A stretch of DNA of 64,000 bases. Origin: Selaginella moellendorffii. Its lineage: Eukaryota; Plantae; Lycopodiophyta. The notes below the pieces were generated by a model. The model had not been told where the DNA came from. It searched no databases and saw only the letters and a program-made list of their open reading frames with translations. The DNA is taken from NCBI RefSeq assembly GCF_000143415.4, contig NW_003314332.1, positions 923,447 to 987,446 of the forward strand, in the 5' to 3' direction. Position 1 is the first letter of the stretch. Each line of letters begins with the position of its first letter. Of this stretch, positions 30,053 through 57,810 are shown one piece after another. Both the position numbers and the translations under genes were made by a program.

Positions 30053-30132
30053 GTTTTAGGGTTTAGGGTTTAGGCGCGTTTAGGTGTTTAGGGTCAAAGA
30101 CACCCCGCGGTGCTGCAATCTGGCGAGATCGC
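30053..30132 (-). mobile_element. Interstitial telomere repeats plus 3' terminus of the telomeric PLE (LINE target site)
   Basis: GTTTTAGGGTTTAGGGTTTAGGCGCGTTTAGGTGTTTAGGGTCAAAGACACCCCGCGGTGCTGCAATCTGGCGAGATCGC, essentially the same as PLE ends at 53152, 54561, 57537. Confidence 0.9.
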
Positions 30133-30615
30133 TGAACGTGTATGTACATTCCCCATGTCCCAATGGGACTAATACAAAAAATTGGCGTGCCGCCCTCTCA
30201 ATGAGCTACTCTACGTGATCCTCATATGCCGCAGCTAGACCTAGTCCTGGAGTAGAAGTGGACGTGTCGATGTCCAAGTCTCCCCCACGAGCTGATCTTA
30301 GAATAGAGTCTGGGGGGCGCCATTGCCAGCGAATCTCGCCACCTCCCAATTTGCCGAAGCATGGGAGCCACCTAGATCTCCACTCCTCGAGCTGTCTCGG
30401 TTTCGCCTGCTCTTTCAGGATGGTGTAGTGAAGACGCACTGCTGCAAGAGTGAGTCTCCACCATGATACCACCACTGCCGATATTCTCGCTTGCTGCCCA
30501 TCAAAGCGACAGTGGTTCCGTGCCTCCCAAAGTGCCTGCAGTCCTGTTGCCCTCCAAATGGACCAGCGCTCATGGCCCAACGCCTCCCAGATGGACATCC
30601 CAACTTCAGCCCCTA

Positions 30616-33600
30616 TCACGTCCCACCGGACTCGCATGTTCCATCGGTGCCGTCCGTAGCAGCGAATACGCCTCCAAGCTGGACCAATGGCTGGACCTCT
30701 AGCTCCCTCAAACCAGTGGAGGATATCCCCACTCCGAGCCTCAAACTCTGGAATGTCGCCGAGTTCCTGCGTCGCTTGAAGATCTGTCGCCAAACTTCTC
30801 TCGCCACGTCACATTCCCATAGGACATGTCGCGTTGTCTCCAGCTCGCCACACTCCTTGCACCGTCGGCATGCTTCTTCCTGGAACTGCTGTCCTATCGG
30901 CAGCCCGTTATTTGCCACCAACCAAGAGGTGGCCTTGACTTTCTCCTGTACCGGTAGTTTCCAGAACGCAAGCGTGTTGCCCACCACCTGATTTGCTTCA
31001 ACTCCTTGCTTGATCCATTTCTTCCAGAGCTTGGGGATCTCCCCTCGGGCCTCCTCCCTGCCGGTCAAGAGACCATCCCTTGCTTCCTTGACGCTGAAGG
31101 AGAAGAAGCTTCTCGCTCCTCGTTTCCATGCTGCGGGGTCCCAATCCAGATCCTCGATGAGCTGCTGTCGCCACCATCTAAGAATGCCTTCCCCCTCTAG
31201 TGCTGCCAACGATTGAACCACCACCGATTGCTTCGGAGCCTGTCGTATTACTCGAATCCTACCCTTGACCTCGTCATCCGTCACCATCGGCATGACCTGT
31301 TCGTCCCCTGCTGGCAACAGCATGTCGCCTCTCAAGACTCGAAAAGGACGCCCAACATTTTGGTCTGGAGACACAACGAACCATACCTCCACATCCCTGT
31401 CCTCCCAAGCTGGTGTTGGGGCCGTAAACGCCCGTGTCCAGGCCCCCAAGCTAACTCGTTCCCTGTCTGGCTCCACGTCCCGTTGCAGAGCCACAAAGTC
31501 TCCAGATTTGAGACAACGCCTAGGCCAGAGCTGCCCCTGCTTCGCCTCACTCATAGCTCTGATAATGCGAAGAAGATCAAGGTGGACTTTCCTCCACCGT
31601 CCCAGGTTAAAGACCTGCATATGCCTCGTAGTCTTCCTCCTGTCCTTGTCCAGAACCCGCACCAGCTGCTTGAGAGTTCGGAAGCCTGCGCTATGTAGCT
31701 TTCTCCAGATTGTGTAGTGGTCCTCCCTGCCCAGCGTCCTGTCATCCAGTTTGAAGAGGTCGTTGAAGAACAGGGGCTGGTTCAGCCAGTCCTCCGCTCG
31801 CCCTGGCAATTCCCTGCTGACTGGAAACGCGCTCCATAACCGGAGAAACCCCTGGACTAGAGTGCCGCCCTTGACTACTTGTTTCGGCCCCTCGGCAAAG
31901 AGCCAACGTGGATCTTCTTCCCACGGTCTTGCAGTGTTGTGCTTGGGCCGGATTGCCAACAAGTTCTGCCTAAACATGAGTCTCCAAGGTTGATTACCTG
32001 GTTGAAGGCCCATGAGGAGGATTTTGTACCGTAGCGCCTTCGCCATGTCGCTCTGATCGATTACTCCAAGTCCTCCCAAGACTCGCGGACGTGCTGTAGA
32101 TTGCCACGCGACCTTGGCCATGCTCCTCCCTGTGACCAGAGCGCCCCGCCACAAATACTGACGGACCATCGTGCGTACCTTTCTAAGAGTGCGTTCTGGA
32201 ACAGGCCAGATGGAGAGGTGGTACCAGATGCCGGGCAGAATGATGCTCCTAGCGACTACCACTCTCGCTGGCAAGCCGAGTTTCCGGGGAGCCCACTTCT
32301 GGATTGACGTTCGTACCCGTCGGAGCAAGGTGTCATCCTGAAGTGCTGCACTAAACCGAGTACCAACCTGGATCCCCAGGTACCTAGCGTCTTCTCCTGG
32401 TTTGAGCCACTGGAAGCCGATGTCCTGCCCCCAAGATTCAATGCCTGGTCGCCCCCAATTTATGCCCACTGATTTGTTCCAGTTAATTGCTGCACCAGCC
32501 GCGAGGTTGAACGTCTCCAACGCCTTCTTAGCTGCATCCATGTTCTCCTTAGTCGCAAGTAGGAACAAGGCAGTGTCGTCCGCAAAAGCACCATCAAGGA
32601 GTTCCCGAGACACCCTTGTGGTTCCCGGAAGTTGCTGTCTCGCAGCCGGCAGTGTGAGTCCTTTAATGCATCCGCCTTCCGCTAGAAACGTGCCCAGGGC
32701 CTCAGCCACAATCAGAAAAAGATAGGGTGCTAGTGGACACCCTTGGCGTACTGAACGTCCCAGCTGGAAACTCGGTCCCGTCTCTCCATTGATTGTGACT
32801 CTGCTTGCGGCTCCTCGGTACAGTAACGAGATCCTAGCGACCATCTCTCTCAGGATGCCGATCGTGTTCATGCACTCCTCTAGGAACCTCCAGTCCACCC
32901 GATCGTAGGCCTTCTCGAAGTCCAATAGCCATGCTGCAGTTTGTTGGTTAGAGATCTCTGCCCATCTCTGAGCCAACAGGTACGTCCAGATGTTTTCTGC
33001 GATTTGCTGCCCTGGAACAAACCCTGTCTGCTGCTCCCGGATGATCAGCGGCATGACAGCTTGGAGCTTGAGGGTCATTGCTTTGGCGTAGACCTTGTAG
33101 GACGTGTTGAGCATGGTGATTGGCCTCCAATTCTTCAGCTCCTGCAGGTCCCCCCTCTTTGGAATAAGCGCAATCTGGCCCTCAAGGATCTCATGGGGCA
33201 AGGTCCCATCACGTTGAGCATCCCACCATGCTTGTAGCAGCAGCGAGCCTATGGTCTCCCAGTGCTCCTCGAAGAAAATGGGCAAGAGGCCATCGATACC
33301 TGGCTGCTTGTCATTGCTGAGCTTCCCGAGCGCTTCCCGAAGCTCCTCCAGTGTGAAGTCCGTCTTCAGTGAGTCGTGCCACTCATGGGGGACTCGCTGG
33401 GGAAGGGACGCAAGCACTTCCACCGCCGCCCTTTCCCTCTCTGGAGTCCACTGCTGGGCCGTATATAGAAGTTGGTAAAACTCCTGGGCGAGCTGTTGCA
33501 TCCCCTGTTGGTCCTCGACGACTCGCCCGTCACTGTGCTTCAGTCCTAGAATGGGAGGAGAGTCCGTCACTGGCCTGATTCCCCTAAAGAAAGCCTTGTT

Positions 33601-34740
33601 GAGAAGGCGTTCATTTAGGGCCCATCCATCATCCATGGCCCGGACGCCCTTGCTCCATGCAGCGTACTCCATGTCACGTAGCTCGGCTTCGCGTTCATCC
33701 AGTATTGTTTGCCACTTGAACTCATCTTGCGTGTTCAGCAACATCCTGTGTGCTGCTGCGACCTTCTTCCTGGCCAGTCTAAGGTCCTTCATCACCGCCC
33801 CTTTGAGATCCTTCTGGCGCGCTCGGAGCTTCTGTGAGCAAGACAAGAGCACAGGGATCAGCCCCAGCTTGTTCTGCGCAAGAGCGTCGTGTATAAGCCC
33901 AATCGCCACTGGGTCTCGCAGCGTGGCTCTAGTGATTGATCGCTGGACCGCTGTCCCTTTGTCCCTTTGGAGCTGGATCACGCATCTGAGGGGGTCGTGA
34001 TCTGAGAAGGAGGCAAACCCTAGCCACGTTTTAAGGCTTCCCCCATCCTGCCGTATGCGAGATGAGGCGTAAATCCGGTCCAGTCTCGACTGGGAGGATA
34101 CTGTCTGTCGCCTTGTAAAAGGGTGAGCGTGAGGTGCGAATCCCGCAGCATGCTGAAGGTCCATGAGCCCCAGTATGTCCATGAGTTGACTCCACTGCTT
34201 CTGTTCACGTGGCTGAATTGTTACCTGCATACCCCTGCGATCACAGACGTCCTCGACCATGTTGAAATCTCCCAGGACCAGCCATTCATCTGCTTGCCCC
34301 TGGGCAGACTGTAGCACACTCAGCCAGAATTCTGCACGTCTCCCTTTCTTCGTTGGTGCATAGACGTTGATTATCCCCACCCGTCCAAAGTGGAGGTGAA
34401 GGACAAGCAATTGAGCCTTTCCTGGGACGAGGACAAGGTGGTTTTGTACCTGAGCAGACCATTTGGTTGAGACTACCACTGCTGTGCCCCCTCCTGGTCT
34501 GGCCACTGCTTGCGTGGCCGGGTTCCACCAGAGCCGTCCCCTCATTCCAAAGGTGTAGTCTGGGGCCACAGTCATTTTGTGCTCTTGCAAGCATAGGATG
34601 TCGATATCTCCTTCTAAGCTGATCTCCCGGATGTGGGACTTGAGCTGCGCCCTTTTGTTGAGTCGACTGCCGGTCCAGCTGAGTCCCCGGCAGTTCCAGG
34701 TGACGAGCGTGAGAGTTGTCATGGAGCCACGTACTTCCAA
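30616..34740 (-). CDS. LINE ORF2: APE endonuclease - reverse transcriptase - CCHC finger; 1-bp frameshift near 30777, true C-terminus continues in 30206-30793
   Basis: TWNCRGL, ILCLQEHK, NVYAPT, GDFN, SRLDRIY, SDH; PGIDGL, WRPITMLN, LDFEKAYDRVDW, RQGCPLAP, FADD; CKECGELETTRHVLWEC. Copy 2 has the extra C (GTCGCCTTG). Confidence 0.95.
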   Translation of the reverse strand: MEVRGSMTTLTLVTWNCRGLSWTGSRLNKRAQLKSHIREISLEGDIDILCLQEHKMTVAPDYTFGMRGRLWWNPATQAVARPGGGTAVVVSTKWSAQVQNHLVLVPGKAQLLVLHLHFGRVGIINVYAPTKKGRRAEFWLSVLQSAQGQADEWLVLGDFNMVEDVCDRRGMQVTIQPREQKQWSQLMDILGLMDLQHAAGFAPHAHPFTRRQTVSSQSRLDRIYASSRIRQDGGSLKTWLGFASFSDHDPLRCVIQLQRDKGTAVQRSITRATLRDPVAIGLIHDALAQNKLGLIPVLLSCSQKLRARQKDLKGAVMKDLRLARKKVAAAHRMLLNTQDEFKWQTILDEREAELRDMEYAAWSKGVRAMDDGWALNERLLNKAFFRGIRPVTDSPPILGLKHSDGRVVEDQQGMQQLAQEFYQLLYTAQQWTPERERAAVEVLASLPQRVPHEWHDSLKTDFTLEELREALGKLSNDKQPGIDGLLPIFFEEHWETIGSLLLQAWWDAQRDGTLPHEILEGQIALIPKRGDLQELKNWRPITMLNTSYKVYAKAMTLKLQAVMPLIIREQQTGFVPGQQIAENIWTYLLAQRWAEISNQQTAAWLLDFEKAYDRVDWRFLEECMNTIGILREMVARISLLYRGAASRVTINGETGPSFQLGRSVRQGCPLAPYLFLIVAEALGTFLAEGGCIKGLTLPAARQQLPGTTRVSRELLDGAFADDTALFLLATKENMDAAKKALETFNLAAGAAINWNKSVGINWGRPGIESWGQDIGFQWLKPGEDARYLGIQVGTRFSAALQDDTLLRRVRTSIQKWAPRKLGLPARVVVARSIILPGIWYHLSIWPVPERTLRKVRTMVRQYLWRGALVTGRSMAKVAWQSTARPRVLGGLGVIDQSDMAKALRYKILLMGLQPGNQPWRLMFRQNLLAIRPKHNTARPWEEDPRWLFAEGPKQVVKGGTLVQGFLRLWSAFPVSRELPGRAEDWLNQPLFFNDLFKLDDRTLGREDHYTIWRKLHSAGFRTLKQLVRVLDKDRRKTTRHMQVFNLGRWRKVHLDLLRIIRAMSEAKQGQLWPRRCLKSGDFVALQRDVEPDRERVSLGAWTRAFTAPTPAWEDRDVEVWFVVSPDQNVGRPFRVLRGDMLLPAGDEQVMPMVTDDEVKGRIRVIRQAPKQSVVVQSLAALEGEGILRWWRQQLIEDLDWDPAAWKRGARSFFSFSVKEARDGLLTGREEARGEIPKLWKKWIKQGVEANQVVGNTLAFWKLPVQEKVKATSWLVANNGLPIGQQFQEEACRRCKECGELETTRHVLWECDVAREVWRQIFKRRRNSATFQSLRLGVGISSTGLRELEVQPLVQLGGVFAATDGTDGTCESGGT

Positions 34741-36564
34741 GAAAGTGAGGAGTTACGGGGTCTCGCCCTCCATTCTGTGGAGATGGTCCACACCGCAGTC
34801 ATCTTCCCCCTGTGCTTCGTCCAGGAGAAGCCTCGAACAGTGTACTTTGCAAAGCCCGTCCACTCAGTGATAGCACTCTCCATGCGTGTGTGGTAGTCTC
34901 CAATAGTGACGACCTCTGGGAAGGCTGTGTTCCCGCGGCACATCAGCCAGTCTCCCGCCTCTGTGGGACTTAATTCCCACTTAGGGGGAATCCACCTGAC
35001 CGCCATTCCTACTGTTTGAGGGAGGACCGGCTGGAAGCCATCTCCTTCGACATCCGTAATAGGTCCCTCGAACAGTTTGGGCTGTGAGGATGAGCCCAAG
35101 AGTGGTGGGGCGACCGGGAAGCGAATGTGGGGAGCTTGGTCCGGAGGGCATGCCTTCAAGATCCGCTCCTGCTCTGCAGGTAACTCAAACGGCTTCTGGG
35201 ATGCCAACCTGTTCCGCTTGACTGAGCAGGCCTCCTCCCGGTGTCCAGCACACTGACAAAAGTTGCATCTAGGTTCTGAGTTCTCCGTTTGGATCCTGAT
35301 ATACTGGCCCAGCACTGCGATCTCTGTCGGGATTTCCGCCGGGGCTGACACGAAAACTTTGAGGCGGATGGGACCTAGAACACCCTCTGCTTCTACAGTG
35401 TCGAGGCCGGCCGCTATCTGGCCGATACTTCCTTCAACCAGCTCCTGTATCACCAATGTGATCCGCATTTCCATGGGAACGTCCCACAATCCAATGTTCA
35501 CTGGAAAGCTCCCGCCCTTGAGACGAGCCTGGTCCTCTGCGGTGAACCTTGGGATCCATGGGTGGAATGACACCGCCCAATTCTCGTCAATGAGGCCATG
35601 CATGGCCTCCGCCTGAGACCGTGCCTCCTCTGTCTCAAAGACGACTGTGTAGCAGCCCTTTCCATGTGGCAGCATCATCTTCATGAGGATTCCCTGGCCT
35701 AGCGTTGCATTGATCCAATCGTTAGCCATGCGACCTGTTGGGAACTTCCCTCTGAAAACAGCGATCAGGGCCTTCTTGCGGAGTTCCTCTTCCTTCTCTG
35801 CTACTGCTCTTTGCAGAGTCTCGGCCAGCTTGACAGGGACTGCCTTTCCTCTTGTGTCATCGTGGATCAAGTCACTTCCGCCTTCCCCTGCTGCTGCCAC
35901 CTTGTGGACTTCGGCCTGACCAGGTGTTCCCCCGTTCACGTTATGTGAGGTGTGCTCCTTGTTAACATCACTGTTCCCGTCCGAGGAGTGCAGCGCTTCC
36001 ACCACCTTTCTGCAGCCCCGAGTCTTCCTCACTCTCGACTGGGCTTTTGCCACTCGCTCCGGGGTGTCAATCTCCTGGTTCTGGTGCACCCGAGACTCTG
36101 TCCTCTTGTCTGGCGGAGCGTGCTCCTCCTCAAGAAAGGCTTCAACTGTGTTTGTCCAGGCCGGGTCCTCCTTGGCAAGTCTCAGAGTTGTAAGCTTCCG
36201 CCGCGTTGCTCGCTTCACTTTCTTCTTCTCACGTTTGGTCTTCCTCTTGTTGAAGGCATCACGGTCCTGGAACTGAAGTGTGCCATCTGACTGTTCCTCC
36301 AGTGAGCGCTCCGTCTCTGGCTCCGTTTCTGGCTCTTCGAGTCCCTCTTCAACTGTTGGTGTTGGCATGGTATCCAACTTGCCACCTTGCTCTTGCGCCC
36401 ATGCATCAAAGAGATCCGCTTGCTGTGTGACCACTGCCTTCGTGATTAATTCTTGAGCTTGACGCAGTGCAGGTCCCAACACGAGGTCCTCCCCCAAAGG
36501 GTTCAGGTCCAGCTCTCTGATTGTGCACATCAATGTTGACTGGAGTTCTTTGCGTACTGGAAGC
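34719..36564 (-). CDS. LINE ORF1, C-terminal part (RRM/DUF4283-like region plus zinc knuckle)
   Basis: GKGCYTVVFETEEARSQA...SFHPWIPRF; CNFCQCAGHREEAC = CX2CX4HX4C; overlaps the ORF2 start by 22 nt. Confidence 0.85.
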
Positions 36565-37253
36565 AAGCTCTATTTCGTTAAAGTGGGATTTATTCAGTAA
36601 AATGGGACTAGGTACAAATTTTCAAGTATTTGAAAATGACATGAAATTATATGTTTTTTGTCCAGGGGCTAGACATATCTGGGGCATGGTGACTAGCGCG
36701 GTGACTTTGTGTCCAGACTGAGTCCATCTGGTTGTATAATAAATCTCATTGTCAAGGTGAACAAGCCGAATCTGAAGCTAAAGAAGAGCGATGGCATGCG
36801 CGCACACACTATTTGTTTGTTCATTGAGCGTGTGGTGAGCTTTCCAAGATGAACGTCATTCCTATTAGCCAGACATATAACTTAATGGTGAGAACATTTA
36901 GATATTATTCAATGTTATCTTTTTCTAACGAATCTAATTGTGAAGGTGTAGCAAGAGGCATTGCTAGTCTGGAGAAGTCATTTAACTCATTTGACCCTTA
37001 GTGTATTTTCATGAAACTAAATAACATTCATATTATTAAGGAATTTCTCTAGTACCTTTTTTTTACGACATAGAGGCTTGCATTTCTTTCAAAGGTGATT
37101 TAGTAAAAGGCCTGAGGGCACATGCCATTCTATTTCTCAGACCAGTATTAAGATATACTAGTGCAAAGGGCCACATGCCATGACGCCTCCTCTGATTCAG
37201 ATTCGGATTGTTCACCTTGAAATAAAATACATTAGAAACTTAGTAAAGGAATA

Positions 37254-39820
37254 TTAAATCTCACCTTGAACCCGGGTTATGAATGCTCTTGCTGCATCTC
37301 TTGCATGGTCTGGCAAGGTGATGGTGGCACTCTGCTTCCGCATCCAACCATGCACAACATTATCCACCGATATGCTCATGCTGGGATCCCTTGGATTCAG
37401 CACCCATCTCTTTTCTAGGCAATCCTTCGTATATCCGGAACTTGGCTTGAACCACTCCACAGTTACATTGAAGGAGTTAGTTTCCGCGTCCTCCTCTGCA
37501 TCAGTGATGCAGTGCCCCACCCATATCATTTGTTTTTTATTACTGGGTCTGACAAGCACGACCATTCCTTTGCAGACTTGTACTGGATTGAATGCTGAAT
37601 CCGGCTTCTTGTTCCTCGGCCCACAATAGTGATCCTCAACATCGTTATCTGTCACTGCATTTCCAGAGGACATTGTTCCGCTACTATCTGGTGCTCTGGG
37701 TTCTGGCCAAAAGGACTCTTCCAATTCTTCATATACAACCGGCCCATTTTGGATAGCAGATATAATCTTCTCCCAGTATTCGAGCAAAGGCTTGCACCTC
37801 TGAAAATAGGATTCTCCACCAAACACCAACCCCCTCTTCCAGAAGGCAATATGCTGTCTAATCCCGGCCACTATACTTTCCTGGTCTTTGAGTCCATCCG
37901 GGTGCATCGGCCGTGGGGAACCCTGAGGAATCATAGGTTCCCCAGTTATGGGATCTCTCTTGAAGAGTTCAATGCCGTCCACTGGCAGCCACACTGTGTC
38001 CCATTCTCTCATCTTGTACCTCATCACTGGAGCACCGTCACGCATGCTGAAATGAAACTGAAGAGGCTTGGAGTGGCCAATCAGCGTTTCGGATCCGTCC
38101 CTGATGTAGCCTCTTACAAACCCCTTAAAGTCTGGAACCTCTGTCACAAGTGCAGCTTCAACAGTGCCTTTGATGCAATTTTGGAATTCATCGTAGAGTT
38201 GTGGGAGGGTGAGGACATTGGATCGCCGGAGGGACTCTGCCAGGTGACTGAACATGGCATCGACGTCTTCATGAGTGTGCCCAACCATGAGAAAGCCAAG
38301 TGTAACCGTTTCAAATATGCCTTTGGCAACAAGCATCGCCAAGTACGCGAAGACGTACATGTTTTTGTTCTCACTGCCAGCATTGTCTGTTTGGAGCAGA
38401 AGATGGGGTGGAAGGCCACATCGGCCGCAAGAACTTCCTTGAGATTCTGCTTCGTTTGGATGAGGCTGTGCATTCACCGGGCGACCAGCCTCGTCGGAAT
38501 GGCATGAGGCCTCACGTGATAACCCTACAATCTGACGGCCAACATATTCACTGGGATGGCATGGGGCCCCACGCGATACTGCAAGCCTTTGCTCCTCCTC
38601 CAACTGAACCCTGTATGGGGTTCGATCGACAAGGGCCTTATGCAAGGGTTGGCCGTTCAGCTCAGTCTGCGCACTTTGCAGAGACCTTAAGTGTTTTGCT
38701 AGGGACGCAATCATCATGTTTGCACCCCCGCCACCCCATAGAGGTACAAAGAAGTTCCCAAGAGGCGGGTTTTATGTGGTTGCTGCTCACTACATGTCTC
38801 GACAAACCTCTTGAAGATTGCCTCTCCATATACAACATGACCCCTGGTTTTGTGCGTACCGTCGTTCCCATGGACTGCCTGTTGAACCCTTTGTTCCTCG
38901 AACTCAGTTTTGATTCTGTAGAATGTGGTTCGAGGGACTCCATAAATGATTCTCCATGCCTTCATGCAGACCAAACCCCTCTGGAAGACCATGCCCCCCA
39001 CCTGATGTTCTGAAGCATCAACAGATGACCGTAATGCCTCATACACAAAATTGCGAGCTGCCTTCCAGGACAATGTCTTGTATCTTGCTCTCTCCTCTTC
39101 AATAGCATCCCAATCAGCATGTTGACAGCACCTCCTCTTGCAACAAGCAACTGTCGAGACCATTCGAACCTCCATCGCTATTTTCTGCCTTTTCGGTTCG
39201 TTGCTCAGATCCCTTTGGCTGTGCTGTAGGAAGGTGTACTTTCTTTTCCCATGAAGAGATGTTCTGTCATCAGTTGTAGTGGTGTTTGATTGTGAATCCT
39301 TCACATTCTCAAACACTAAATGCCTCAATTTCCACCGCACAATGCTTCCAATAGTCAGACTGTTTTCTTCTGTGTCAACAACCTCTAAAATTGCAACTCC
39401 AATATCATCCCAGCCCAATTCTTGATTAGCAACCGCATCTCTTGGATCGACAACTGTGGCTAAGCCCTCAGCTACCACCTTCCCCTCGGGGTTGTTTAGA
39501 AACACCTTTGCCTGAATCCATGTAGCACGGTTCTTAAGATCCACGGAGGGAACATGCGTCGCACTTGCGCTGTCCCCAACATCTGCTTTCTTTTGCAGAT
39601 TTTTCAAGGCAACAACAACATTTACCCCGACGACCATCTCTCCTCGTTCAATAGCGACCACATTCCCATCGAAGACAGTCTCTACTGATACAGCAGCATT
39701 GCCTTCCCCAAGCCTTTGACAGTGTATAACAAAGTTCCGATCCATAGACACAAGGGTCCCTTTTGCAACTCTCTTCCCACCATTCAAAATGTAAACCCTT
39801 TCCCCAACCCTGAAGGCCAT
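37254..39820 (-). pseudogene. Sola1-like (DUF7869-type) DDD transposase, split in two ORFs, probably internally deleted
   Basis: LQTDNAGSENKN and FLMVGHTHEDVDAMFS in 37254-38717; CCKRRCC, VCMKAWRIIYGV, HGN, QPHKTR in 38714-39820; frame break near 38760. Confidence 0.75.
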
Positions 39821-40177
39821 TCTGAAAGTGCAGAAAAGAAGTTAAGACCATACAAAAAATGATTGGAGAATGGCCTAAATCATAACATACCAAATAGCAT
39901 GAGGCCACATGCCATTATTCAAACATGCTATTGACACCCACGTGAAATTTCGCATTCACAAAATTGGCATGAGGCCTCATGCCATCTTGATATACACACA
40001 GCTGCAGGCAAGTAAAAACATACATGACAATACGCTAGCCATGAAATTGCAAGGGCCCAAGATGGCATGTGGCCTCATGCCATTTCTAAATGTGGTCCTA
40101 AACCATTCCATGGTGAACATACCAGGAAGCACAAGTGCCGAATATCAAGAGGAAGCGGTAGCCACACCAAAGACAGT

Positions 40178-40250
40178 GCCGCTCGCAACACCGCAACTAC
40201 TCGTAGCGCCGCTCGCAACACCGCAACTGCTCGTAGCGCCGCTCGCACAA
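40178..40250. repeat. 30-bp tandem repeat (~2.5 copies)
   Basis: GCCGCTCGCAACACCGCAACTRCTCGTAGC units. Confidence 0.8.
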
Positions 40251-40620
40251 ACTGCCACTCGCATAAACTGCCGCTCGCAATGGCGCTCGCAATGCCGCAA
40301 CCGCTTGTAGACGCATAAACCACAGCTCACAACGCCGCTTACACAAGCAGCGCTCACTGCGCTCAGCGGAACCAAGAACACGGCGCACAAAAATGATAGA
40401 CCTAGGAATGAGTTCGAGAATTCAAAAATAACACAAGCTTGAACGTCACATCAAATCCTTTGACAAACCAGATCTTATGATTCCTCTGACAAATTTCAAA
40501 CTGAGTAGCTTCTAGACTTTGCTGTCGGAGGTTGAACTTTGTCACATCATGTCCTTGCCTCGATCCAGCTGTGCTATGTCAGTGATTCGAACTTTGCCAT
40601 GCCATGTCAGCGATCCGCGC

Positions 40621-42470: not shown

Positions 42471-42898
42471 CTGAAAATGGCATGCGGCCCCACGCCATTC
42501 AAGAGATAACGCCAGATGACGCCGAGCATTTTTTGGTGCATTTTTTGGGATCAAAATTGCATGAGCCCACATGCTTGAATGTCATCCTCTGACAATTTAT
42601 TTAGCTGAACATCTGGCATTTTTGGAAATACAAGATGCTTTGGAATATCCAATCATGCATGGTATAAATATAGCGAGGGTATTAAATGATATCCCAATCA
42701 TGATCTTTCTTTTGGATTTCGCATGCATGCAGTCCGAGGAATGATGACGTTGCGGATTTCTTTTGGATTTCACACATGCGCGCGCCGATCCAGAAATTAA
42801 TGGTGGCGCCCAAGTCCGAGAAATGATGACGTGGCGGGATTACCAACCGTTGTGACATTTCGCGCGTGTGAGGTTAGGTTTTGCATTTTGCTTCGTAC

Positions 42899-43125
42899 TC
42901 GCGCTCGCACACTCGCGCTCGCATCGCGCTCCCACTCGCGCTCGCATCGCCCTCCCACTCGCGCTCGCATCGCGCTCCCACTCGCGCTCGCATCGCGCTC
43001 CCACTCGCGCTCGCATCGCGCTCCCACTCGCGCTCCCACTTCTCTACAGGTTTCTCGTGTGCATCGGCGTCCACTCGCGCTTGCATCACACTCGCGCTCG
43101 CATCGCGCTCGCATCGCGCTCGTGT
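42899..43125. repeat. CpG-rich 23-bp minisatellite
   Basis: CACTCGCGCTCGCATCGCGCTCC x ~5.5 plus degenerate copies. Confidence 0.9.
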
Positions 43126-43341
43126 GCATCGGCGTCCACTTCAAGACACACCCAGTTTGTAACTTCGCCGCCAACTCCGCCGCCCACTCCGCCACCCACA
43201 CGCAGCCCACTTGGCGTCCCGGGAGATTTCAGCGCCACTCTCCAACTGTAAGTGGCAGAGTAGCCTTGCTGCTACGATTCGCTGCACACACAGTGCACAT
43301 TCGCCAGCGAGTCCGGTTGTCACGCCTCCATTCGGCTTCAA

Positions 43342-46157
43342 ATGGTAAGTCTTTTAGGCCAAGTAGAAAATGGCATGAGGCCACATGCCATTCAGTAGCA
43401 ACATTGGCATGCACCGATTGGGCTCTCGAGTGCAGTCCGGTTACAGATGGCGTGTAGCCTCACGCCATCTTAGGATGCAGCCTCAAGACATCTGATGCAG
43501 TGGTGAATGGCGTGTGGCCTCACGTTATTTCCAGCTGCTAGCTTTTCTTCTGTCAGCTCTAATTGTTGTGCATTTCTGAACAGGCGAGGAATTGCGTTCT
43601 TCTTCCAGCCACTGTCAATGTGGATGCAGAGAAGGGGGAGGAGCTCACCAATTGGACTTTCGGGATGGAAGGCAAGGATCTGAGGCTGTACAACACAGAT
43701 GGTGGGAGAAAAGAATGCATGGGGATCCTCATCCAAGTGACAGACACTCCATGCAGTTCCATGCAAGAATATGGACTGGCACTTGTGGTAGAGACAGCGT
43801 CTGCCTTCAAGATCCACCTTGCACATCCTAGCGGCTTCCCGGAGGGGGGCAGCGGCTATGAGGAATTCCTAGAGGGAGCTAGGGAGAGGTTGTCCAGGAG
43901 GCCCACAATTTCAAAGACGCTGCGGGTCTATGAAGATCACATGGAATCCACGGACCTCACCTACGGCGATGTTCAAAAACTATATTCCAACATTGAGCCG
44001 TTGAGAGTGACTCCAGTTCGCGAAGCAAAGGGGAAGGGGGTCGATCTGGAAACTACCTCGAAGCAGAAAAGGGTGGTCAAGCTCAAGCCGACGTCCGACT
44101 CTCCTGCTCCAAAAAAGAAGCTACTCAGTGATGCCATTGCCTCGGGTTCGAACACTACACCCACCAAAAAGAAGAGCCGCAAAGAGCAGAAAGAGCAAGA
44201 AGAGGCAGCAAAAATCGTCGCAGATAATAGTACTTGTTACTATTCCAACAAAGTATATACAATCGACGTGAGCCGTATCGACATCCAAAGCAAATACAAC
44301 CACAGGCTAGTATCTGATGAGTGGGTGGAGAAATTGAAGCAGAAGATGCTGGCAAGTCCAGTAACACCCGACATCACAGACGTGATCCCCTACTACCAAA
44401 AAATGAAGGGCGAGATGAGGTTTCCAGACTTGATCAATAGGAAGGTGTTGGACGATCAGAACATCCGGTTCTATGCCGTCTCCGGGCAGCATTCTAGCTT
44501 GGCGATGCAAGAGATAGTTGTGGATATTATGGTGGGCGAGGAGGTGAAGAAAGTCTTCAAGACAAGAGTTGTCCGCCTGATAAAAGGCAACTCGCCCCTC
44601 CGATCTATCATATACATCTCCCACGCGCAGAATGTCAAGCAAGAAACGTGCTACAAATCGGGTCTGCACGAGACATTGGCACGAACACGGAAGCTCTGGG
44701 TTCAACTGAAGAAGCCACAAAAACCAGGACAAGGACGTGCACTAGCAACTAGCGCCTGGCAGGTAAGCCTCGTTGTATGTGGCATAGCATGTGGCCTCAC
44801 GCCATTTCCATTGCAGGAATTCTCGAGTCTTCTCTCGAAAACACTGGGGGTCAATGACACACTCAGCATCCATAACATTCTACTCGCGACAAAAGTTGTT
44901 TTTGACAAATGGGTAGATGTGCTGAGGAGGTACCATGACGGGGAGTTGCCAAACTCAATGGGTGTGGAGGACGGCCGGAAGCCCAATGATTTGAAGCTCA
45001 ACGCCTTGCGTTTCTCGCGGTCTCTAGACGACGACGACCTTCTGACAGTGGCTAATGCTCTTCTACGTGGTGAGGTTGTCTTCAACAAGACCAAAATGAC
45101 TCCCGGCCATATTGTGACATACGAGGACTTGTGCACGACTCTGAGAGCTCGTGCGCTATTGAAGGATTGGATCTTCGAGCAAGTGGCCGTGGAGAGGGTG
45201 AGCATCGACACCACGCAAGAGATGATGGAAGCGCTGGAGTTGTCAAATGAAGACATCGACGAGTACGTGAAGGGGGCCCCCAAGTTCATCGATCTGCTGC
45301 GGGATGCCACGAAAAGTAAAGCTGAGAAGTTGGATCAGTATCCAAATTTCATTAAGATTGATGTCGACCGCCGGCTTCAGAAACAGCTCGACCCCGCAGC
45401 AGAGGCCTATCGAGAACCTTACCGGGTATACTTGAATTCGGATGAGGATCAAAGGTGGAGGAGCATCGTTTCCCGCGGAGATGAGCAGGTCAAGAACATC
45501 TTTTGTGTGATGGACTTCACAAACGAGGAGATCACTCATGCAGATGAAGTCAGCTCCATCATTGACTTAATGGTGGGACTTGCGGAGGTGGAATCTTCAG
45601 TCCACTATATGATCTACGACTCCGAATCCTATCACAAGTTCTGAAAGGCCTTGAACGAGGTGAAGGCTCGGTTGAAAGGCAAGGAGATGCGGGAGATCCA
45701 TGGGATAATGGCTAAGAAGAAGATACCGACGAATGTCCGCATCTTCACACTCGCCCTTGTTATTGGTCCTGCAGCAGAGTGGGACTGGAGTGACTTCCCA
45801 GCTTCGTTCGACAAGGCCAATCGAATTGATCTAAGGGAGGTCAATTTACCCGTGCCTGAGGAACTGAAGACGGCTATGGAGCTTTCCAATCCAAAGAAAG
45901 CTCCAGGTGCAGCATGGGAAATGCTCAGCTGGGTCTTCAACGCAATAGCGGGTGGGTCACCTGCTTCCGACTCCAAGGGCAAATGCGTTGTCGAGTACAA
46001 CTGCGGCGGACTATTCTTTCGAGCCGCACTACTCAAGGGTGTCCCGTGTGTTGCGGTGACAAACTCCATTGAAGAGGTGACTTCAATGGAGCATATAATT
46101 ACAGTTGCCAAAGAAAAACAGTATCTTCTCTGCGAACCTGGTGAGTACGCACTTTAA
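43342..46157 (+). CDS. Transposon accessory gene: ParB/Srx-like domain plus degenerate amino-methyltransferase-like C-terminus; one in-frame stop at 45642-45644; probably continues through small exons to ~48950
   Basis: ATG 43342, intron 43345-43583, then in-frame ARNC. IDVSRI..NHRLVSDEWVEKLKQKM...FYAVSGQHSSLA resembles the ParB N-domain. PKKAP..KCVVEYNCGGLFFRAALLKGVPCVAV resembles beta-class MTase motifs X/I. ORFs 43563-45644 and 45651-46157 share a frame. Confidence 0.55.
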
Positions 46158-46645
46158 GTTTAAATGTTATCTCACAAGCTCTGTATGCAGGAGCGTGGCC
46201 ACCCCCAGATGCTGAAACGGCGTTAACAGCTACTGTTGAAGATACCCATGTTGGGCCGAGCTCACAACCTGCACAAGGTAAGGTCATGTGAGGCCTCACG
46301 CCATTTTGATTATAGATCGTTGTGAATATTCAGACACGAGGACTGAAAAGCGCACTGGTGGCGCATCGAAGAAGGACAAACAGAAAAGCAATAGGAAAAA
46401 AGGAGGTACAAATTATATTTGCAATGGCGTGTGGTCTCATGCCATTCCTTGCAGGAGAAACTTCTTCAAAGGCAAAACAGGCAAGCACCAGCCAAGCTCA
46501 AACTGACAGTGGTCATAAAAAGTGAAAGCACGTTGGATAGTCGTCGAGATCAGAGGCGTTTGATTCGAAAAGGAAGAAGGGCAACAAAAAGATGATAGGT
46601 AATGCCTCGCGGTTATGGCGTGTGTGCTCATGCCATTCATTGCAG

Positions 46646-47185
46646 ATCAAGGGCTGAGTGAAAGCAGGCAGTCACCACCTCATGACTCAGATTCCTATGG
46701 CGGACTCCCCTTCCCCAATCTCAATGGAGAGGTACAATGGATGAGGGAAGCTTTTCAAGGCAGGGCCATGTTTTTCTCATCTCATCGTCTTCGAAGGGTG
46801 CAAGAACGTGCAGAAACCATGTTAAGACAGTCGGGTGAGGATACGGTCCTAGGTCACGCACTAAAACAGGCTATGGATGTCTTGTATTTTGAGATGGAGA
46901 CTCGGCCAGATGATTTTCCCAAGATGGTCCTGGAAGAACAAGCCATCCAGCCTGAGCAGCCTATGGAAGAAATGCAGGAGGGGGATGAGGAGCCAGAGAA
47001 AGATAATGAGCAGGAAGAGCAGAAGGACAAAGAGGAGGACAAAGAAGAGGAGGACGAAGAAGAGGAGGACGAAGAGGACTTGGATGGTCCTCACAATGGT
47101 GACGATCACAATAACGACGACGACGATGGCCAGCCTGAGGTGGCCAAAGAGCGGCGGAGGAAGGTCATACAAGACAAACCATCAG
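46646..47185 (+). CDS. Acidic (E/D-rich) exon of the accessory gene
   Basis: ORF 46615-47193 with EEDKEEEDEEEEDEED; flanked by TTGCAG acceptor and GTAAAT donor. Confidence 0.5.
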
Positions 47186-48067
47186 GTAAATAATAATACA
47201 TCCATTCCTAACCTTTTACCATTTCTAACATTGTCCATGTAGGTCGCAGAGCAAATGGTAAGTAGAGATTATTCAGTTGAATTTACAAACTCTAGCCTTT
47301 AGTGTCGAGGAAGGATAGTGCCAAGCAAGGGTCGAAACGTATGTCCAATCCTTCAGAATCAGCAGTGCGCTCAAGTGATATCGGTCCTAGTTCCTCAATA
47401 GCAGTTGATGGTAAATACAGTATAGTCGATTCAATGTGCTAATGAGTTTGTTTTTAGTAGCACGGGAGGATACCATCTCAATCGAAGGGAGATATTTGGA
47501 CATGCATATGGATCCGCCAGTGGACTCTACTTGGCTGCAAGAGTCATCAGAGCTGGTGGAGGCTACTATCCATATCAACGCCAAGCAAGCTGACCACGCT
47601 CCACTTGATGCTGCCCATACCACTGAGTCAATCTTGTCCACGTATCCAACTGACGGTGACCAGGCGCCATTGGACCCACATGAGGCCGCCCCAGCCGCCG
47701 AGCCGGTCGTATCCTCATTTCCAACGGACTCAACGTGTGCCCAATCGTCTGACTATGCGCCGTTGGAACCTCCCTACACCGCCCCTGCTGCCTGTTCGGT
47801 CATGTCCACTTTGCCAACGGAGGCACCAGCTGAAATGGCGTGTGATCACACGCCATCGGAACCACCCCATGCCACTGTTGAGCCAGTTGTACCAGAGTCT
47901 ACAGCTGAAATGGCATGTGCCCACACGCCATCGGATGCGATTGACCCCACATTGCAGAGGAGAGTATTTCCGCCCTTCACGTTTCCTCGACCAAAACCCT
48001 CTCAACGACCATCGGGAGCAACATTCGCTAATATTGTAGATGGTAAAATTGACTTGTACCATTTTTT

Positions 48068-48952
48068 ATGCTGACGCATTTCATTTCAGAGTCACGGCGA
48101 AGGTACTGTATCGTTTTTGATCTGAACGGTGTCCTTTTCTCCCATGAGCGTGGCTCGTCCTCGAATGTCATTGCACCCTCCAAAGCCTGCGGTCGCAAGT
48201 TGGTCAAAAGAGACAGATTCACATTAATCACACGGGAGAAACTGCGGGATCTAATAATGACCATGCGACACTTAAAACAGAGGGCCGGGTTCAATTTGCA
48301 ATTGGGAGTTTGGACATCCATGATGCGCCACAATGCATTAACGTTGCTACAGATGATGTACGATCAGACGCGAGTAATATTACCATTTGACTTTCTCCTA
48401 ACGCAGGAGGATTGCTTGACTATGGTCCATGTGAGGGGTAGCAAGCCCATCTTCGTCAAGCCAGAGGCTGTAGTGATGAACCGGACTGCTAGCTCAAGTG
48501 AAATCCTCATTATCGATGACTCGCCGATTAAAACTGCAGCGAACACGCACACATATGCAGTGCACCCCATCTCTTGCAGTATGGAAACTAGGGAGAAGAA
48601 ACCGTATGTTCTGGGGGACCTTGCAAAATGGCTTGGAGCGATGGTGATAGAAAACCGACCAGTCCAGGAGGTGGCTGCAGAAATCAACCAAATGGCAGAT
48701 GGAACGGTATATCAGAAGCCATTTGATCGGACAGACACCAGTCATCATTTATGGCATGTATATTGTCTAGCCAAGCACTATCCGCATCTCCATAATCTGC
48801 TCAACCGGATGGGTTCTTCGACCACTGAACATGAGCGTGGACGTATTAGAGAAGAGATGGCATTACTATTGGGTTTAAATCCTGATAGTGTGGAGAGTGA
48901 TGAAATTCCAAGATTATTGTATAGGCGTTGGAGGCAAAAAATAACAGTCTGA
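48068..48952 (+). CDS. FCP1/NIF-type HAD-superfamily phosphatase-like ORF (terminal exon or separate gene)
   Basis: IVFDLNGVL (motif I, DxN variant), LGVWTS (motif II), PIFVK (motif III), ILIIDDSPIK (motif IV). Confidence 0.75.
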   Translation: MLTHFISESRRRYCIVFDLNGVLFSHERGSSSNVIAPSKACGRKLVKRDRFTLITREKLRDLIMTMRHLKQRAGFNLQLGVWTSMMRHNALTLLQMMYDQTRVILPFDFLLTQEDCLTMVHVRGSKPIFVKPEAVVMNRTASSSEILIIDDSPIKTAANTHTYAVHPISCSMETREKKPYVLGDLAKWLGAMVIENRPVQEVAAEINQMADGTVYQKPFDRTDTSHHLWHVYCLAKHYPHLHNLLNRMGSSTTEHERGRIREEMALLLGLNPDSVESDEIPRLLYRRWRQKITV

Positions 48953-49398
48953 GATGGCATGTATTTATTTAAAAATGTAACTTATTATGGCATGGGGTTC
49001 CATGCCATTGTATTAATATTAAAAGACAATTCTTTGAGAGGATTTGCATTATACTAGAAGTGTTACAGCATGTTATTGGAAGTCTACGAAGTTGTTTTAT
49101 TAATAATGGGAAAGTAAATATTGAATGGGGACTTGGGCTCCACCTAGACTCGGAGCAACTGAGCCAATATTAAAAGGATGGAAAGAAATTGGACGACGAT
49201 GACAAGGAGAAGAGAGAGGTGAAGCAGTGGCAGGGGGAGGAGAAGTGATTGAGTAGACATTTCCTTGTTTAAAATAAAATGGCATGTGCCTCAATGCAGT
49301 TGAATTTTGTTATATTTATATACTATATAAAGGTTTGGAAACCTTATTTTACAAGTGGGATAATGACAATTCCCACTTTAACGAAATAGAGCTTAAGC

Positions 49399-50955: not shown

Positions 50956-51192
50956 AAAAAGGGGAACAATACTTCCCTGAATCTCACGGCGGATGCCCCC
51001 GCCGATGGTAGCAAGTGTGGGGAGATTGCACGCTCTCCCCTAAGCGCTCTTCTACCTCTGGCTGCGCCTCCGATCACGGCAGCCATGGTATTGGGTGCTT
51101 TCCTCCACGTCCTCCCCAAAAAACGTCCAACATTAGGGTTTAGGCGTTTAGGGTCAAAGACACCCCGCGGTGCTGCAATCCGGCGAGATCGC

Positions 51193-52192
51193 TGAACGTG
51201 TATGTACATTCCCCATGTCCCAATGGGACTAATACAAAAAATTGGCGTGCCGCCCTCTCAATGAGCTACTCTACGTGATCCTCATATGCCGCAGCTAGAC
51301 CTAGTCCTGGAGTAGAAGTGGACGTGGTCGTCTCGAGCGAGTCATGTCGATGTCCAAGTCTCCCCCACGAGCTGATCTTAGAACAGAGTCTGGGGGGCGC
51401 CACTGCCAGCGAATCTCGCCACCTCCCAATTTGCCGAAGCATGGGAGCCACCTAGATCTCCACTCCTCGAGCTGCCTCGGTTTCGCCTGCTCTTTCAGGA
51501 TGGTGTAGTGAAGACGCACCGCTGCAAGAGTGAGTCTCCACCATGATACCACCACTGCCGATATTCTCGCTTGCTGCCCATCAAAGCGACAATGGTTCCG
51601 TGCCTCCCAAAGTGCCTGCAGTCCTGTTGCCCTCCAAATGGACCAGCGCTCATGGCCCAACGCCTCCCAGATGGACATCCCAACTTCAGCCCCTGTCACG
51701 TCCCACCGGACTCGCATGTCCCATCGGTGCCGTCCGTAGCAGCGAATACGCCTCCAAGCTGGACCAATGGCTGGGCCTCTTGCTCCCTCAAACCAGTGGA
51801 GGATATCCCCACTCCGAGCCTCAAACTCTGGAATGTCGCCGAGTTCCTGCGTCGCCTTGAAGATCTGTCGCCAAACTTCTCTCGCCACGTCACATTCCCA
51901 TAGGACATGTCGCGTTGTCTCCAGCTCGCCACACTCCTTGCACCGTCGGCATGCTTCTTCCTGGAACCGCTGTCCTACCGGCAGCCCGTTATTTGCCACC
52001 AACCAAGAGGTGGCCTTGACTTTCTCCTGTACCGGTAGTTTCTAGAACGCAAGCGTGTTGCCCACCACCTGATTAGCTTCAACTCCTTGCCCGATCCATT
52101 TCTTCCAGAGCTTGGGGATCTCCCCTCGGGCCTCCTCCCTGCCGGTCAAGAGACCATCCCTTGCTTCCTTGACGCCGAAGGAGAAGAAGCTT
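51193..52192 (-). mobile_element. 5'-truncated second copy (1.0 kb) of the same LINE, inserted in the PLE 3' end
   Basis: Near-identical to 30133-31113; flanked by CTGCAATCCGGCGAGATCGC at 51173-51192 and 52193-52212. Confidence 0.95.
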
Positions 52193-53110
52193 CTGCAATC
52201 CGGCGAGATCGCGGCACCACTTTGTGCAATCCACATTCTCCGTGTGCCGTTGTCGAAACGGCGTGATCGAGAGCAAGTAGAGGAGGGGAGGGAATGAATT
52301 TTCATTCATTCGTGAGCAAGGGAGAGGACAAGAGACAACCCGAGACTGGTTTCGTCCTTTTTGGGACTCATCAGCCGGGTGTAGTCGTCTAGTGTCTACG
52401 CTAACCCTAGCTCGGTGCCGGCTCTACTTATATTTTGGCTCTGTCACGTGGCGCGAGTCCGTGTGGCGGCCATGCGAAGTGGTGTGGCAGCGTTGGCTCG
52501 CGAGGGTGCAAACGTAGCACATCTGGTGTTGGTTACTCCACAGCAGTGGTAGTCGCGGAGAATGACTTCGGCAGATCGCCGAAGACAGTAAGCGTTCGGC
52601 CGGCGGGTGACGTACCTTTGACGCAAGATAACTTGTAAACGTGGCGTGATATGATGCATGCATTACGTCCACAATGCTTGTGTCACTCGTACGTACCCGG
52701 CGACGAAAAACGTGGTTCACTTTGCAGGGAATATTCTGGGAATATTCCGTCGTTGACCGTTGACCCCGCGTTGACCGTGTGTGGACTGGGATGGTGGAGG
52801 GCCTGAGGTCACTCATACATACCCGGAGTCCAGCGGTGATGCAGGGGAGAGCCATCCCACGAGCTGTCGGCGTGCGTCGCCGATGTCGAAGGAGCGGCAC
52901 CGTTTTAATGGAATACACGCTTTTCAACGAATTGTGTGTGGAGTTCAGAGTTGAAACTCACATATTCACGATCGGGAGGAAGAGCGGAATCCAACGGTAT
53001 ATGCCCTTTTGACTCGGTCAACAAAAACACTGTCAGGGAATATTCGGGAATATTCCATTCTGACAGTTGACTCCGCGTTGACCGTGCGTTGACTCGAAAG
53101 GGAGGTGGCT
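52193..53110 (-). mobile_element. PLE copy A (3' non-coding part; its terminus is 51133-51192), capped by telomere repeats
   Basis: Near-identical to 54605-55520 and 57583-58495. Confidence 0.9.
52338..52380 (-). ncRNA. Type I hammerhead ribozyme (variant stem III)
   Basis: ACCCGG-CUGAUGA-GUCC-CAAAAA-GGAC-GAAA-CCA-GUC/UCGGGU. Confidence 0.85.
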
Positions 53111-53151: not shown

Positions 53152-53298
53152 TTTAGGCGCGTTTAGGCGTTTAGGGTCAAAGGCACCCCGTGGTGTTGCA
53201 ATCCGGCGAGATCGCGGCGCCACTTTGTGCAATCCACATTCTCCGTGTGCCGTTGTCGAGACGGCGTGATCGAGAGCAAGTAGAGGAGGCAAGAGAAT
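53152..53298 (-). mobile_element. PLE copy B, 3'-terminal ~150 bp
   Basis: TTTAGGCGCGTTTAGGCGTTTAGGGTCAAAG...GAGGAGGCAAGAGAAT. Confidence 0.9.
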
Positions 53299-54138: not shown

Positions 54139-54560
54139 GGTTTTTAGGGTTTAGGGTTTAGGGTTTAGGGTTTAGGGTTTAGGGTTTAGGGTTTTAGGGT
54201 TTAGGGTTTAGGGTTTAGGGTTTAGGGTTTAGGGTTTAGGGTTTTAGGGTTTAGGGTTTAGGGTTTAGGGTTTAGGGTTTAGGGTTTAGGGTTTAGGGTT
54301 TAGGGTTTAGGGTTTAGGGTTTAGGGTTTAGGGTTTAGGGTTTAGGGTTTAGGGTTTAGGGTTTAGGGTTTAGGGTTTAGGATTTAGGAGCGTTTAGGCG
54401 TTTAGGGTCAAAGACACCCCGCGGTGTTAGGGTTTAGGGTTCTAGGGTTTAGGGTTTAGGGTTCAGGGTTCAGGGTTCAGGGTTTAGGGTTCAGGGTTCA
54501 GGGTTTACGGGTTCAGGGTTTAGGGTTTAGGGTTTACGGTTTAGGGTTTAGGGTTTAGGG
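54139..54560 (+). repeat. Telomeric tract with an embedded ~45-bp PLE stub (54383-54427) and TTCAGGG variants
   Basis: Direct reading. Confidence 0.95.
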
Positions 54561-57536: not shown

Positions 57537-57725
57537 TTTAGGCGCGTTTAGGCGTTTAGGGTCAAAGACACCCCGCGGTGTTGCAATCCGGCGAGATCGC
57601 GGCACCACTTTGCGCAATCCACATTCTCCGTGTGCCGTTGTCGAAACGGCGTGATCGAGAGCAAGTAGAGGAGGCAAGAGAATGAATTTTCATTCATTCG
57701 CGAGCGAGGGAGAAGACAAGAGACA

Positions 57726-57768: not shown

Positions 57769-57810
57769 GTAGTCGTCTAACGTCTACCCTAACCCTAGCT
57801 CAGCGCCGAC

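What the first reader, a model, noticed from the sequence alone, without database searches (positions are those of the whole stretch)
30053..52212. L1/Tx1-type LINE that appears to insert site-specifically into the 3' end of the telomeric Penelope-like element
Seen: both LINE copies have the identical 3' junction ...GGCGAGATCGC|TGAACGTGTATG (30132/30133 and 51192/51193), ~60 nt inside the PLE terminus. Copy 2 is flanked by a duplication of PLE sequence CTGCAATCCGGCGAGATCGC (51173-51192, 52193-52212; 18-20 bp, as the CT is shared with the LINE), after which the PLE resumes exactly. PLE ends at 53152, 54561 and 57537 show the empty site. There is no poly(A) tail, and LINE and PLE share orientation. 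Established: Tx1-clade APE LINEs often target multicopy sequences, including other transposons, whereas plant L1s are generally not sequence-specific. Inference: this LINE is a hyperparasite using the continually renewed telomeric PLE array as a safe haven. I do not know of a description of this pairing.
Basis: partly seen in the sequence, partly recalled or inferred. Interest (0 to 1): 0.88.

Follow-up and report, generated by a model that had tools for sequence, protein, structure and literature searches.

The report
Plant LINE targeting a telomeric retroelement
At a chromosome end of the spikemoss Selaginella moellendorffii, one jumping gene repeatedly inserts at a single letter inside the tail of a second, telomere-extending jumping gene; this is known in principle from frogs and crocodiles, but I found it described neither in a land plant nor with this target.

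Summary
Confirmed and extended. The window is a Selaginella moellendorffii chromosome end built from telomere tracts and an endonuclease-less, hammerhead-bearing Penelope-like element (PLE). Two copies of an APE/RT LINE end at the same base, about 60 nt inside the PLE 3' tail, without poly(A). Copy 2 has an 18-20-bp duplication. Public contigs add two other 5' truncation points joined to the same target with 17-bp duplications, so these are independent insertions. Two junctions outside the PLE were also seen: the preference is strong, not absolute. The duplicated stretch is the upper stem-loop of a PLE hairpin, with similar motifs at both cut positions, which points to the LINE's own endonuclease (inferred). 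Corrections: copy 1 spans 30133-51140, is split by a 12.8-kb DNA transposon and has no duplication at its 5' end. The LINE does not group with vertebrate Tx1-like proxies (p=1e-5). It belongs to a Selaginella L1-clade lineage that also holds a LINE lying antisense in 25S rDNA, while fern-like relatives keep poly(A). It works like Xenopus Tx1L in Tx1D; I found no published description of this pairing. The scan noted it before on other pieces of this genome. 'Safe haven' is untested.

The parts
30054..30132 (-). Short telomere tract plus PLE 3' tail, joined to a broken PPR-gene paralogue; likely a former healed chromosome end and the target of copy 1
   Evidence: 29924-30044 is 97.5% like 4062-4182, the 3' part of a PPR gene copy
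30133..36564 (-). LINE copy 1, 3' part: 3' UTR without poly(A), ORF2 (APE endonuclease, RT, zinc finger; ATG 34722; 1-nt deletion near 30774 shifts the last codons), ORF1 3' part (weak DUF4283-like region and CCHC knuckle)
36565..49394 (.). 12,830-bp DNA transposon (24-bp perfect inverted ends, 4-bp duplication AAGC, DUF7869 protein) nested in ORF1 of copy 1
   Evidence: same family in GL377652.1
49399..51140 (-). LINE copy 1, 5' part: ORF1 N-terminal region (ATG about 51086, frameshifted near 50478) and part of the 5' UTR, ending at TTAGGGTT (51133-51140)
51133..51192 (-). PLE 3' tail joined at the LINE's telomere-like octamer; holds the left copy of the duplication (51173-51192)
   Evidence: (X3 contig 9)
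51193..52192 (-). LINE copy 2, 1.0 kb, 5'-truncated, one in-frame stop; 1.6% substitutions and a 20-bp indel versus copy 1
52193..52212 (.). Right copy of the target duplication (18-20 bp here; 17 bp, from 52196, in two other insertions)
52193..53109 (-). PLE unit resuming after copy 2; type I hammerhead ribozyme at 52338-52380
53152..53298 (-). Short PLE unit with empty target (53215/53216)
54382..54428 (-). PLE tail stub that stops 1-3 nt left of the inferred second cut, followed by telomere repeats
54561..57360 (-). PLE unit with empty target (54624/54625); target hairpin 54598-54633; hammerhead 54750-54792; decayed RT end
57537..60150 (-). PLE unit with empty target (57600/57601), hammerhead 57726-57768, and 5'-truncated RT ORF 58613-60145 with no endonuclease domain detected
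60327..60372 (-). Second PLE tail stub ending at the same place as the first
60151..63993 (+). Terminal TTTAGGG array, about 545 units (N run 61045-61217)

Best explanation
A Selaginella L1-clade LINE family has a sequence-specific APE endonuclease whose preferred site is the hairpin-forming pseudo-palindrome about 60 nt from the 3' end of the telomeric PLE. Shown: repeated independent insertions at one base, 17-20-bp duplications, no poly(A), and all endonuclease and RT catalytic motifs present in copy 1. Inferred steps: (1) the endonuclease nicks the G-rich strand at GATCGC^GG; (2) LINE RNA, lacking poly(A), probably reads through into the PLE tail, so its 3' extension can pair with the nicked primer strand and fix the junction, as reported for other target-specific elements; (3) reverse transcription, often 5'-truncated; (4) a second nick on the other strand at the near-mirror motif on the opposite hairpin arm, 16-18 nt away, which duplicates the upper stem-loop. 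Copy 1 most simply inserted this way and then lost its distal side when the end broke and was re-capped by a PLE tail at the octamer in its 5' UTR. Because PLE tails are added repeatedly at chromosome ends and each insertion re-creates the target, sites stay available.
For: Identical 3' junctions in two window copies and in contigs spanning the junction in runs X3 and X5. Three different 5' truncation points at one target: 52192 in the window, 51659 joined to 52196 (X1), and LINE position 33592 joined to 52196 (X3). The duplicated stretch equals the upper stem-loop of a hairpin with z=-4.2. The two cut contexts match 11/15, the top score, reached by 4 of 4,500 position/stagger pairs along the PLE 3' region; the motif occurs nowhere else in the window. 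Endonuclease motifs are at ORF2 residues 9, 45, 119, 151, 212 and 240. A relative in the same clade (100/97) lies antisense in 25S rDNA without poly(A), while five fern-like relatives end in poly(A) with unrelated flanks. An endonuclease that cuts both strands of its target is documented for R1Bm (PMC1919474); co-transcribed target strengthening specificity is cited in PMC4494074.
Against: Two junctions outside the PLE: X5 loose end at 51195, and X1 joint 51027 to 51195, a LINE 3' end within the LINE's own 5' region. Fifty-eight loose ends were not displayed, so the on-target fraction is unknown. The two extra 5' junctions are on short contigs that do not show their 3' ends. Copy 1 has no duplication. 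Copies 1 and 2 share nine letters against the read majority, so they come from one sub-lineage. A mirror-like target should sometimes give the opposite orientation, and none was seen. The symmetry score was computed after seeing the site. No LINE RNA was seen in the one RNA run, so read-through is unobserved. No biochemical test.
Confidence: 0.8

Rival explanations
1. The LINE has taken over the PLE tail as its own RNA 3' end. Read-through LINE+tail RNA docks on the chromosome end through the tail's telomere-complementary repeats and is copied there by PLE or LINE RT without a cut, so the shared junction is inherited from one founder. This may hold for copy 1 even if the main model holds for the rest.
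For: Copy 1 is flanked by telomere repeats plus tail on one side and a fresh PLE tail on the other, with no duplication. LINE polarity is the one used to extend the G-rich strand. The literature describes EN-minus PLEs attaching to telomere overhangs by such tails (PMC8557442).
Against: It does not explain 17-20-bp duplications with the PLE resuming exactly after three different truncation points. The rDNA-inserted relative suggests targeting without any PLE tail. No LINE-tail RNA was seen.
Confidence: 0.12
2. One old insertion was spread by subtelomeric duplication or gene conversion.
For: Subtelomeres recombine (established knowledge); the two copies share nine minority letters.
Against: Different 5' truncation points, each with its own target duplication, need separate integration events. 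The copies differ at 16 sites plus a 20-bp indel, and their outer flanks differ.
Confidence: 0.04
3. The PLE's RT stalls at its own hairpin and switches template to LINE RNA and back, so the site is a template-switch hotspot, not an endonuclease target.
For: The junction lies inside a strong hairpin, and two PLE stubs end within it.
Against: It needs a jump to the exact LINE 3' end and a return 17-20 nt backwards every time. LINE 3' ends also occur at non-PLE sites with partly similar letters. The LINE has its own intact endonuclease motifs.
Confidence: 0.04

Closest known systems
Tx1L of Xenopus laevis (inserts in the DNA transposon Tx1D); crocodilian SINEU-3 in Mariner-N4
   Same: APE-type, L1-related machinery with one preferred site inside another transposon and a short duplication (PMC4494074; PMC1950540). 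SINEU-3 is also strongly but not wholly on target (313 of 347).
   Different: Tx1 is described as an animal clade; this RT does not group with vertebrate Tx1-like proxies. The target is the functional 3' tail of a telomeric retroelement, not a DNA transposon.
EN-minus telomeric PLEs of S. moellendorffii (Gladyshev & Arkhipova 2007, as cited in PMC12477314, PMC8557442 and PMC4209133)
   Same: The host element: RT without detected endonuclease, type I hammerhead, reverse-complement telomere repeats at the 3' end, chains at chromosome ends.
   Different: The passages I could read mention no LINE inserted in it; the 2007 paper was not held. Family identity with the published elements was not checked by sequence.
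TRAS1/SART1 (Bombyx) and R1Bm
   Same: Sequence-specific APE LINEs; TRAS/SART sit at telomeres; R1Bm endonuclease cuts both strands of its target (PMC1919474; PMC10088271).
   Different: R1 clade; their targets are telomere repeats or 28S rDNA, not a retroelement.
Zepp / ZeppL (green algal L1)
   Same: Green-lineage L1 that builds nested clusters by targeting existing element copies (PMC8226300).
   Different: Zepp targets its own copies and its clusters are mostly centromeric; it ends in poly(A).
Land-plant L1-clade LINEs (fern-like relatives P0001-P0034; flowering-plant L1)
   Same: ORF1 with DUF4283-like and CCHC regions, ORF2 APE-RT-zinc finger; 33-43% identity to the nearest relatives.
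   Different: Those end in poly(A): 5 of 5 checked in the fern-like group and 224 of 233 flowering-plant families (PMC3472496), with no fixed flank seen.

Membership tests
L1 clade (broad) | ORF1 plus ORF2 with N-terminal APE endonuclease, RT and C-terminal zinc finger | tested here: met
   Pfam Exo_endo_phos, RVT_1, zf-RVT; ORF1 CCHC knuckle read, DUF4283 only at E=0.12
L1 clade (broad) | RT closer to L1 ORF2 than to other non-LTR clades | tested here: met
   Best solved-structure match human L1 ORF2, E=5e-47, versus R2 at 1e-15; only these two clades were available there
L1 clade (broad) | 5' truncation and short target duplication | tested here: met
   Copy 2 and two contig junctions, 17-20 bp
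L1 clade, typical plant type | 3' poly(A) tail | tested here: not met
   No tail at either 3' junction; relatives L001-L005 have one
Flowering-plant L1 lineages | RT forms one clade with angiosperm L1 | tested here: inconclusive
   Not in the best tree, but not rejected (p-AU 0.159)
Tx1 clade | RT monophyletic with animal Tx1 elements | tested here: not met
   AU p=1.1e-5 against grouping with 11 fish and amphibian elements. These are proxies (their group carries ZCCHC3-type ORF1 domains), not curated Tx1 references, and the tree is unrooted.
Tx1 clade | Target-sequence preference in a multicopy sequence | tested here: met
Sequence-specific APE LINEs | Purified endonuclease nicks the target site | not testable with these tools
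   Catalytic motifs present; no assay possible
EN-minus telomeric PLE (host element) | PLE-type RT without GIY-YIG endonuclease | tested here: inconclusive
   Pfam finds only a weak RVT_1 match in 58613-60145; PLE-type motifs were recognised by eye; the ORF is 5'-truncated and no PLE reference was compared
EN-minus telomeric PLE (host element) | Hammerhead ribozyme and reverse-complement telomere repeats at the 3' end, at a chromosome end | tested here: met
   Three Hammerhead_1 hits above the gathering score; tails and tracts

The most novel reading that the evidence does not exclude
The LINE is tied to chromosome-end turnover, not just lodged there. Its read-through RNA carries the PLE tail, which both guides precise insertion and lets whole LINEs be added to chromosome ends (copy 1). 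Its endonuclease also sometimes severs PLE tails, leaving the stubs at 54428 and 60372 that telomerase re-caps. A plant telomere would then be shaped by telomerase, a PLE and a PLE-specific LINE together.
Probability: 0.2. Interest if true: 0.85.

Novelty: new variant of a known kind. Interest (0 to 1): 0.66.

Why it matters
Sequence-specific APE LINEs are documented mainly in animals, and plant L1s are described as mostly poly(A)-tailed. Here a land-plant lineage appears to have evolved targeting independently of Tx1, and related members sit at different targets: the PLE tail here and 25S rDNA in L007 (one locus checked). That gives a natural pair of related endonucleases for studying how target specificity changes. 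The near-mirror target offers a direct test of whether the same enzyme makes the second-strand cut, a step still poorly understood in LINE integration (PMC6895275 abstract). It also bears on how spikemoss chromosome ends grow: about 30 kb here lies beyond an old healed break, of which 22 kb is the two LINE copies and the transposon nested in one of them.

Tried and rejected
The full-length ORF2 search returned no Selaginella copy, a 400-aa C-terminal search returned nothing, and exact look-ups of window proteins failed; given the length filter these blanks mean little. The 70%-identical sister family (L006) could not test the target: the same DNA transposon family interrupts it just before its 3' end. 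L009 lacks its 3' end, P0018 had no DNA, and L008 shows neither a clear poly(A) nor a recognisable target. Reading 51133-51192 as a 60-bp duplication of copy 1 was rejected: it differs from the left flank, and one X1 contig shows the LINE continuing with other letters after 51140. LINE 3'-end hairpins fold no better than shuffles (z -1.2 and +0.4), so no structured-tail claim is made. The bacterial promoter scan is irrelevant here. Gladyshev & Arkhipova 2007, Arkhipova 2017 and Christensen 2000 were not held, and Repbase could not be consulted. Paper searches found no description of this pairing.
Full report
Source and setting. The window ends in about 545 TTTAGGG units. Its repeats match Selaginella moellendorffii scaffold GL377652.1 at 90-99%, and the nearest protein relative of ORF2 (about 70% identical) is a S. 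moellendorffii model. The species has TTTAGGG telomeres (PMC3400083) and published endonuclease-less telomeric PLEs with type I hammerheads (PMC4209133; PMC12477314). Right of 51133 the window is a chain of PLE units on the minus strand separated by telomere tracts. Three units carry a hammerhead and one an RT frame with no endonuclease domain detected.

The observation. Both LINE 3' ends join the PLE tail at the same base with no poly(A). Copy 2 has an exact 20-bp duplication, two letters of which are also LINE sequence. The PLE resumes at 86/88 identity, and three empty sites are present.

ORF1 of copy 1 is cut at 36564 by a 12,830-bp transposon with inverted ends and a 4-bp duplication, and resumes at 49399. 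Without it the copy is about 8.2 kb. It stops at TTAGGGTT (51133-51140), where the next PLE tail begins. One X1 contig shows other LINE copies continuing past this octamer with different letters, and an X3 contig spans the joint as assembled. So copy 1 has no 5' duplication; its distal side was re-capped at an internal telomere-like seed (inference). Its left flank is a PPR-gene paralogue broken and followed by telomere repeats, i.e. an older chromosome end. Both copies are damaged: copy 1 has frameshifts in ORF1 and late ORF2, and copy 2 has a stop.

Independent insertions. Laying three sets of public contigs and one RNA run on 49400-53100 gave contigs spanning the on-target 3' junction in X3 (51174-52010) and X5 (51164-52191 and on into the LINE body). 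It also gave two new 5' junctions: 51659 to 52196 in X1, and, in X3, letters matching LINE 33563-33592 exactly joined to 52196. Each implies a 17-bp duplication. With copy 2 that makes three truncation points at one target, which duplication of one insertion cannot give. Limits: these contigs are short and do not show both ends of a copy; X1 or X3 may come from the sequenced accession; 58 loose ends were not shown. Two LINE 3' ends lay elsewhere: after ...GATTGATA in X5, and after ...GGGAGATT in the LINE's own 5' region in X1. Both contexts partly resemble GATCGC, but the exact junction letters are uncertain. The preference is therefore strong, not absolute. The RNA run gave 43 reads, all in PLE bins on one strand, with eight across the empty site and none in the LINE body.

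The target. In PLE-sense RNA, 54598-54633 folds into a two-part hairpin (z=-4.2); the duplicated stretch is its upper stem and loop. In DNA this is a pseudo-palindrome. The first-cut context AGATCGC^GGCACCAC and the opposite-strand context GGATTGC^AGCACCGC match at 11 of 15 letters, a score reached by 4 of 4,500 position/stagger pairs in the PLE 3' region (a post-hoc test). The motif occurs in the window only on these two arms. With 17-bp duplications the second cut would lie one base inside the mirror position, or both cuts lie at GATYG^C with one shared letter; the sequence cannot decide. R1Bm endonuclease cuts both strands of its target, so one enzyme making both cuts is plausible. A LINE without poly(A) lying 60 nt from the PLE end would read into the tail, whose first 18 nt are complementary to the nicked primer strand; co-transcribed target is reported to strengthen specificity in other systems. 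This step is inferred, not observed.

Family. ORF2 has APE, RT and zinc-finger domains with all catalytic motifs and is closest to human L1 among solved structures. In RT trees it groups with a fern (Adiantum) element and unnamed assembly elements (97/83). With Selaginella relatives added, it forms a clade with L006 and L007 (100/97). Grouping with 11 vertebrate Tx1-like proxies is rejected (p=1.1e-5); grouping with angiosperm L1 is not (p=0.16). The trees are unrooted, use a subset of hits, and lack curated references. Five fern-like relatives end in poly(A) with unrelated flanks. L007 has no poly(A) and runs directly into antisense large-subunit rDNA, agreeing with earlier scan notes on rDNA-targeting LINEs, though I checked only this one locus. 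The simplest reading is a Selaginella lineage that gained targeting convergently with Tx1 and has members at different targets.

Rivals. Tail capture and docking at chromosome ends explains copy 1 but not the duplications (0.12). Spread of one insertion (0.04) and template switching by PLE RT (0.04) fit poorly. Two PLE stubs end 1-3 nt left of the inferred second cut and are followed by telomere repeats. This could record cutting by the LINE enzyme or RT stalling in the hairpin; I cannot tell.

Known systems and novelty. It works like Tx1L in Tx1D and SINEU-3 in Mariner-N4 but is not filed as Tx1. TRAS/SART and Zepp differ in clade or target. Seven paper searches found no report of a LINE targeting a PLE or of this pairing, but key papers and Repbase were unavailable. 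The scan had already noted the same pairing on other pieces of this genome; those notes are leads and I did not count them as support. Verdict: real, new variant of a known kind, interest 0.66.

Noticed in passing
window 54382-54428 and 60327-60372: Two PLE tail stubs stop at the same place, 18-20 nt left of the LINE junction and 1-3 nt from the inferred second cut, then telomere repeats follow.
   Followed up: partly
window 36565-49394; L006 from 12775: A 12.8-kb transposon with 24-bp inverted ends, 4-bp duplication and a DUF7869 protein (Sola-like by memory, not tested) sits in copy 1; the same family also interrupts the sister LINE in L006. It carries a NIF-phosphatase-like frame (48068-48952) and two internal (GTTTAGG)4 tracts (41106, 41977).
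   Followed up: partly
L007:7955 onward: A related S. moellendorffii LINE (44% in RT) ends without poly(A) directly on antisense large-subunit rDNA. The rDNA site and the empty PLE tail share the 8 letters CACAAAGT, but at different offsets from the junction; possibly chance.
   Followed up: partly
window 51133-51140: The LINE 5' UTR holds a telomere-like octamer (AACCCTAA in sense, like a plant telo-box) at which a PLE tail was joined.
   Followed up: partly
window 53301-54138: An 838-bp piece, 95% like 1724-2547 in reverse (part of a repeat also in L006), lies between a truncated PLE unit and a telomere tract.
   Followed up: no
window 3780-4029: A short stretch that reads like an 18S rDNA fragment (recognised by eye; below the Rfam threshold) ends in telomere repeats: a possible older healed break.
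   Followed up: no
window 57181-57212 and 57329-57361: A perfect 32-33-bp inverted repeat at the 5' end of the PLE unit 54561-57360; this unit is only 83% like the 57537 unit in the RT region and differs beyond 56640, suggesting two PLE subfamilies.
   Followed up: no
window 12308-18220 and 25959-29868: Inverted, decayed duplicate LRR-Roc-COR (ROCO) genes at about 85-91% identity, plus several PPR-gene copies at 4045-9500 and 20900-21900.
   Followed up: no
X23 and X5, loose end before 51138: Twelve RNA reads and one DNA contig show the PLE tail continuing into non-telomeric letters, so at least one transcribed PLE tail has an internal or tandem context.
   Followed up: no
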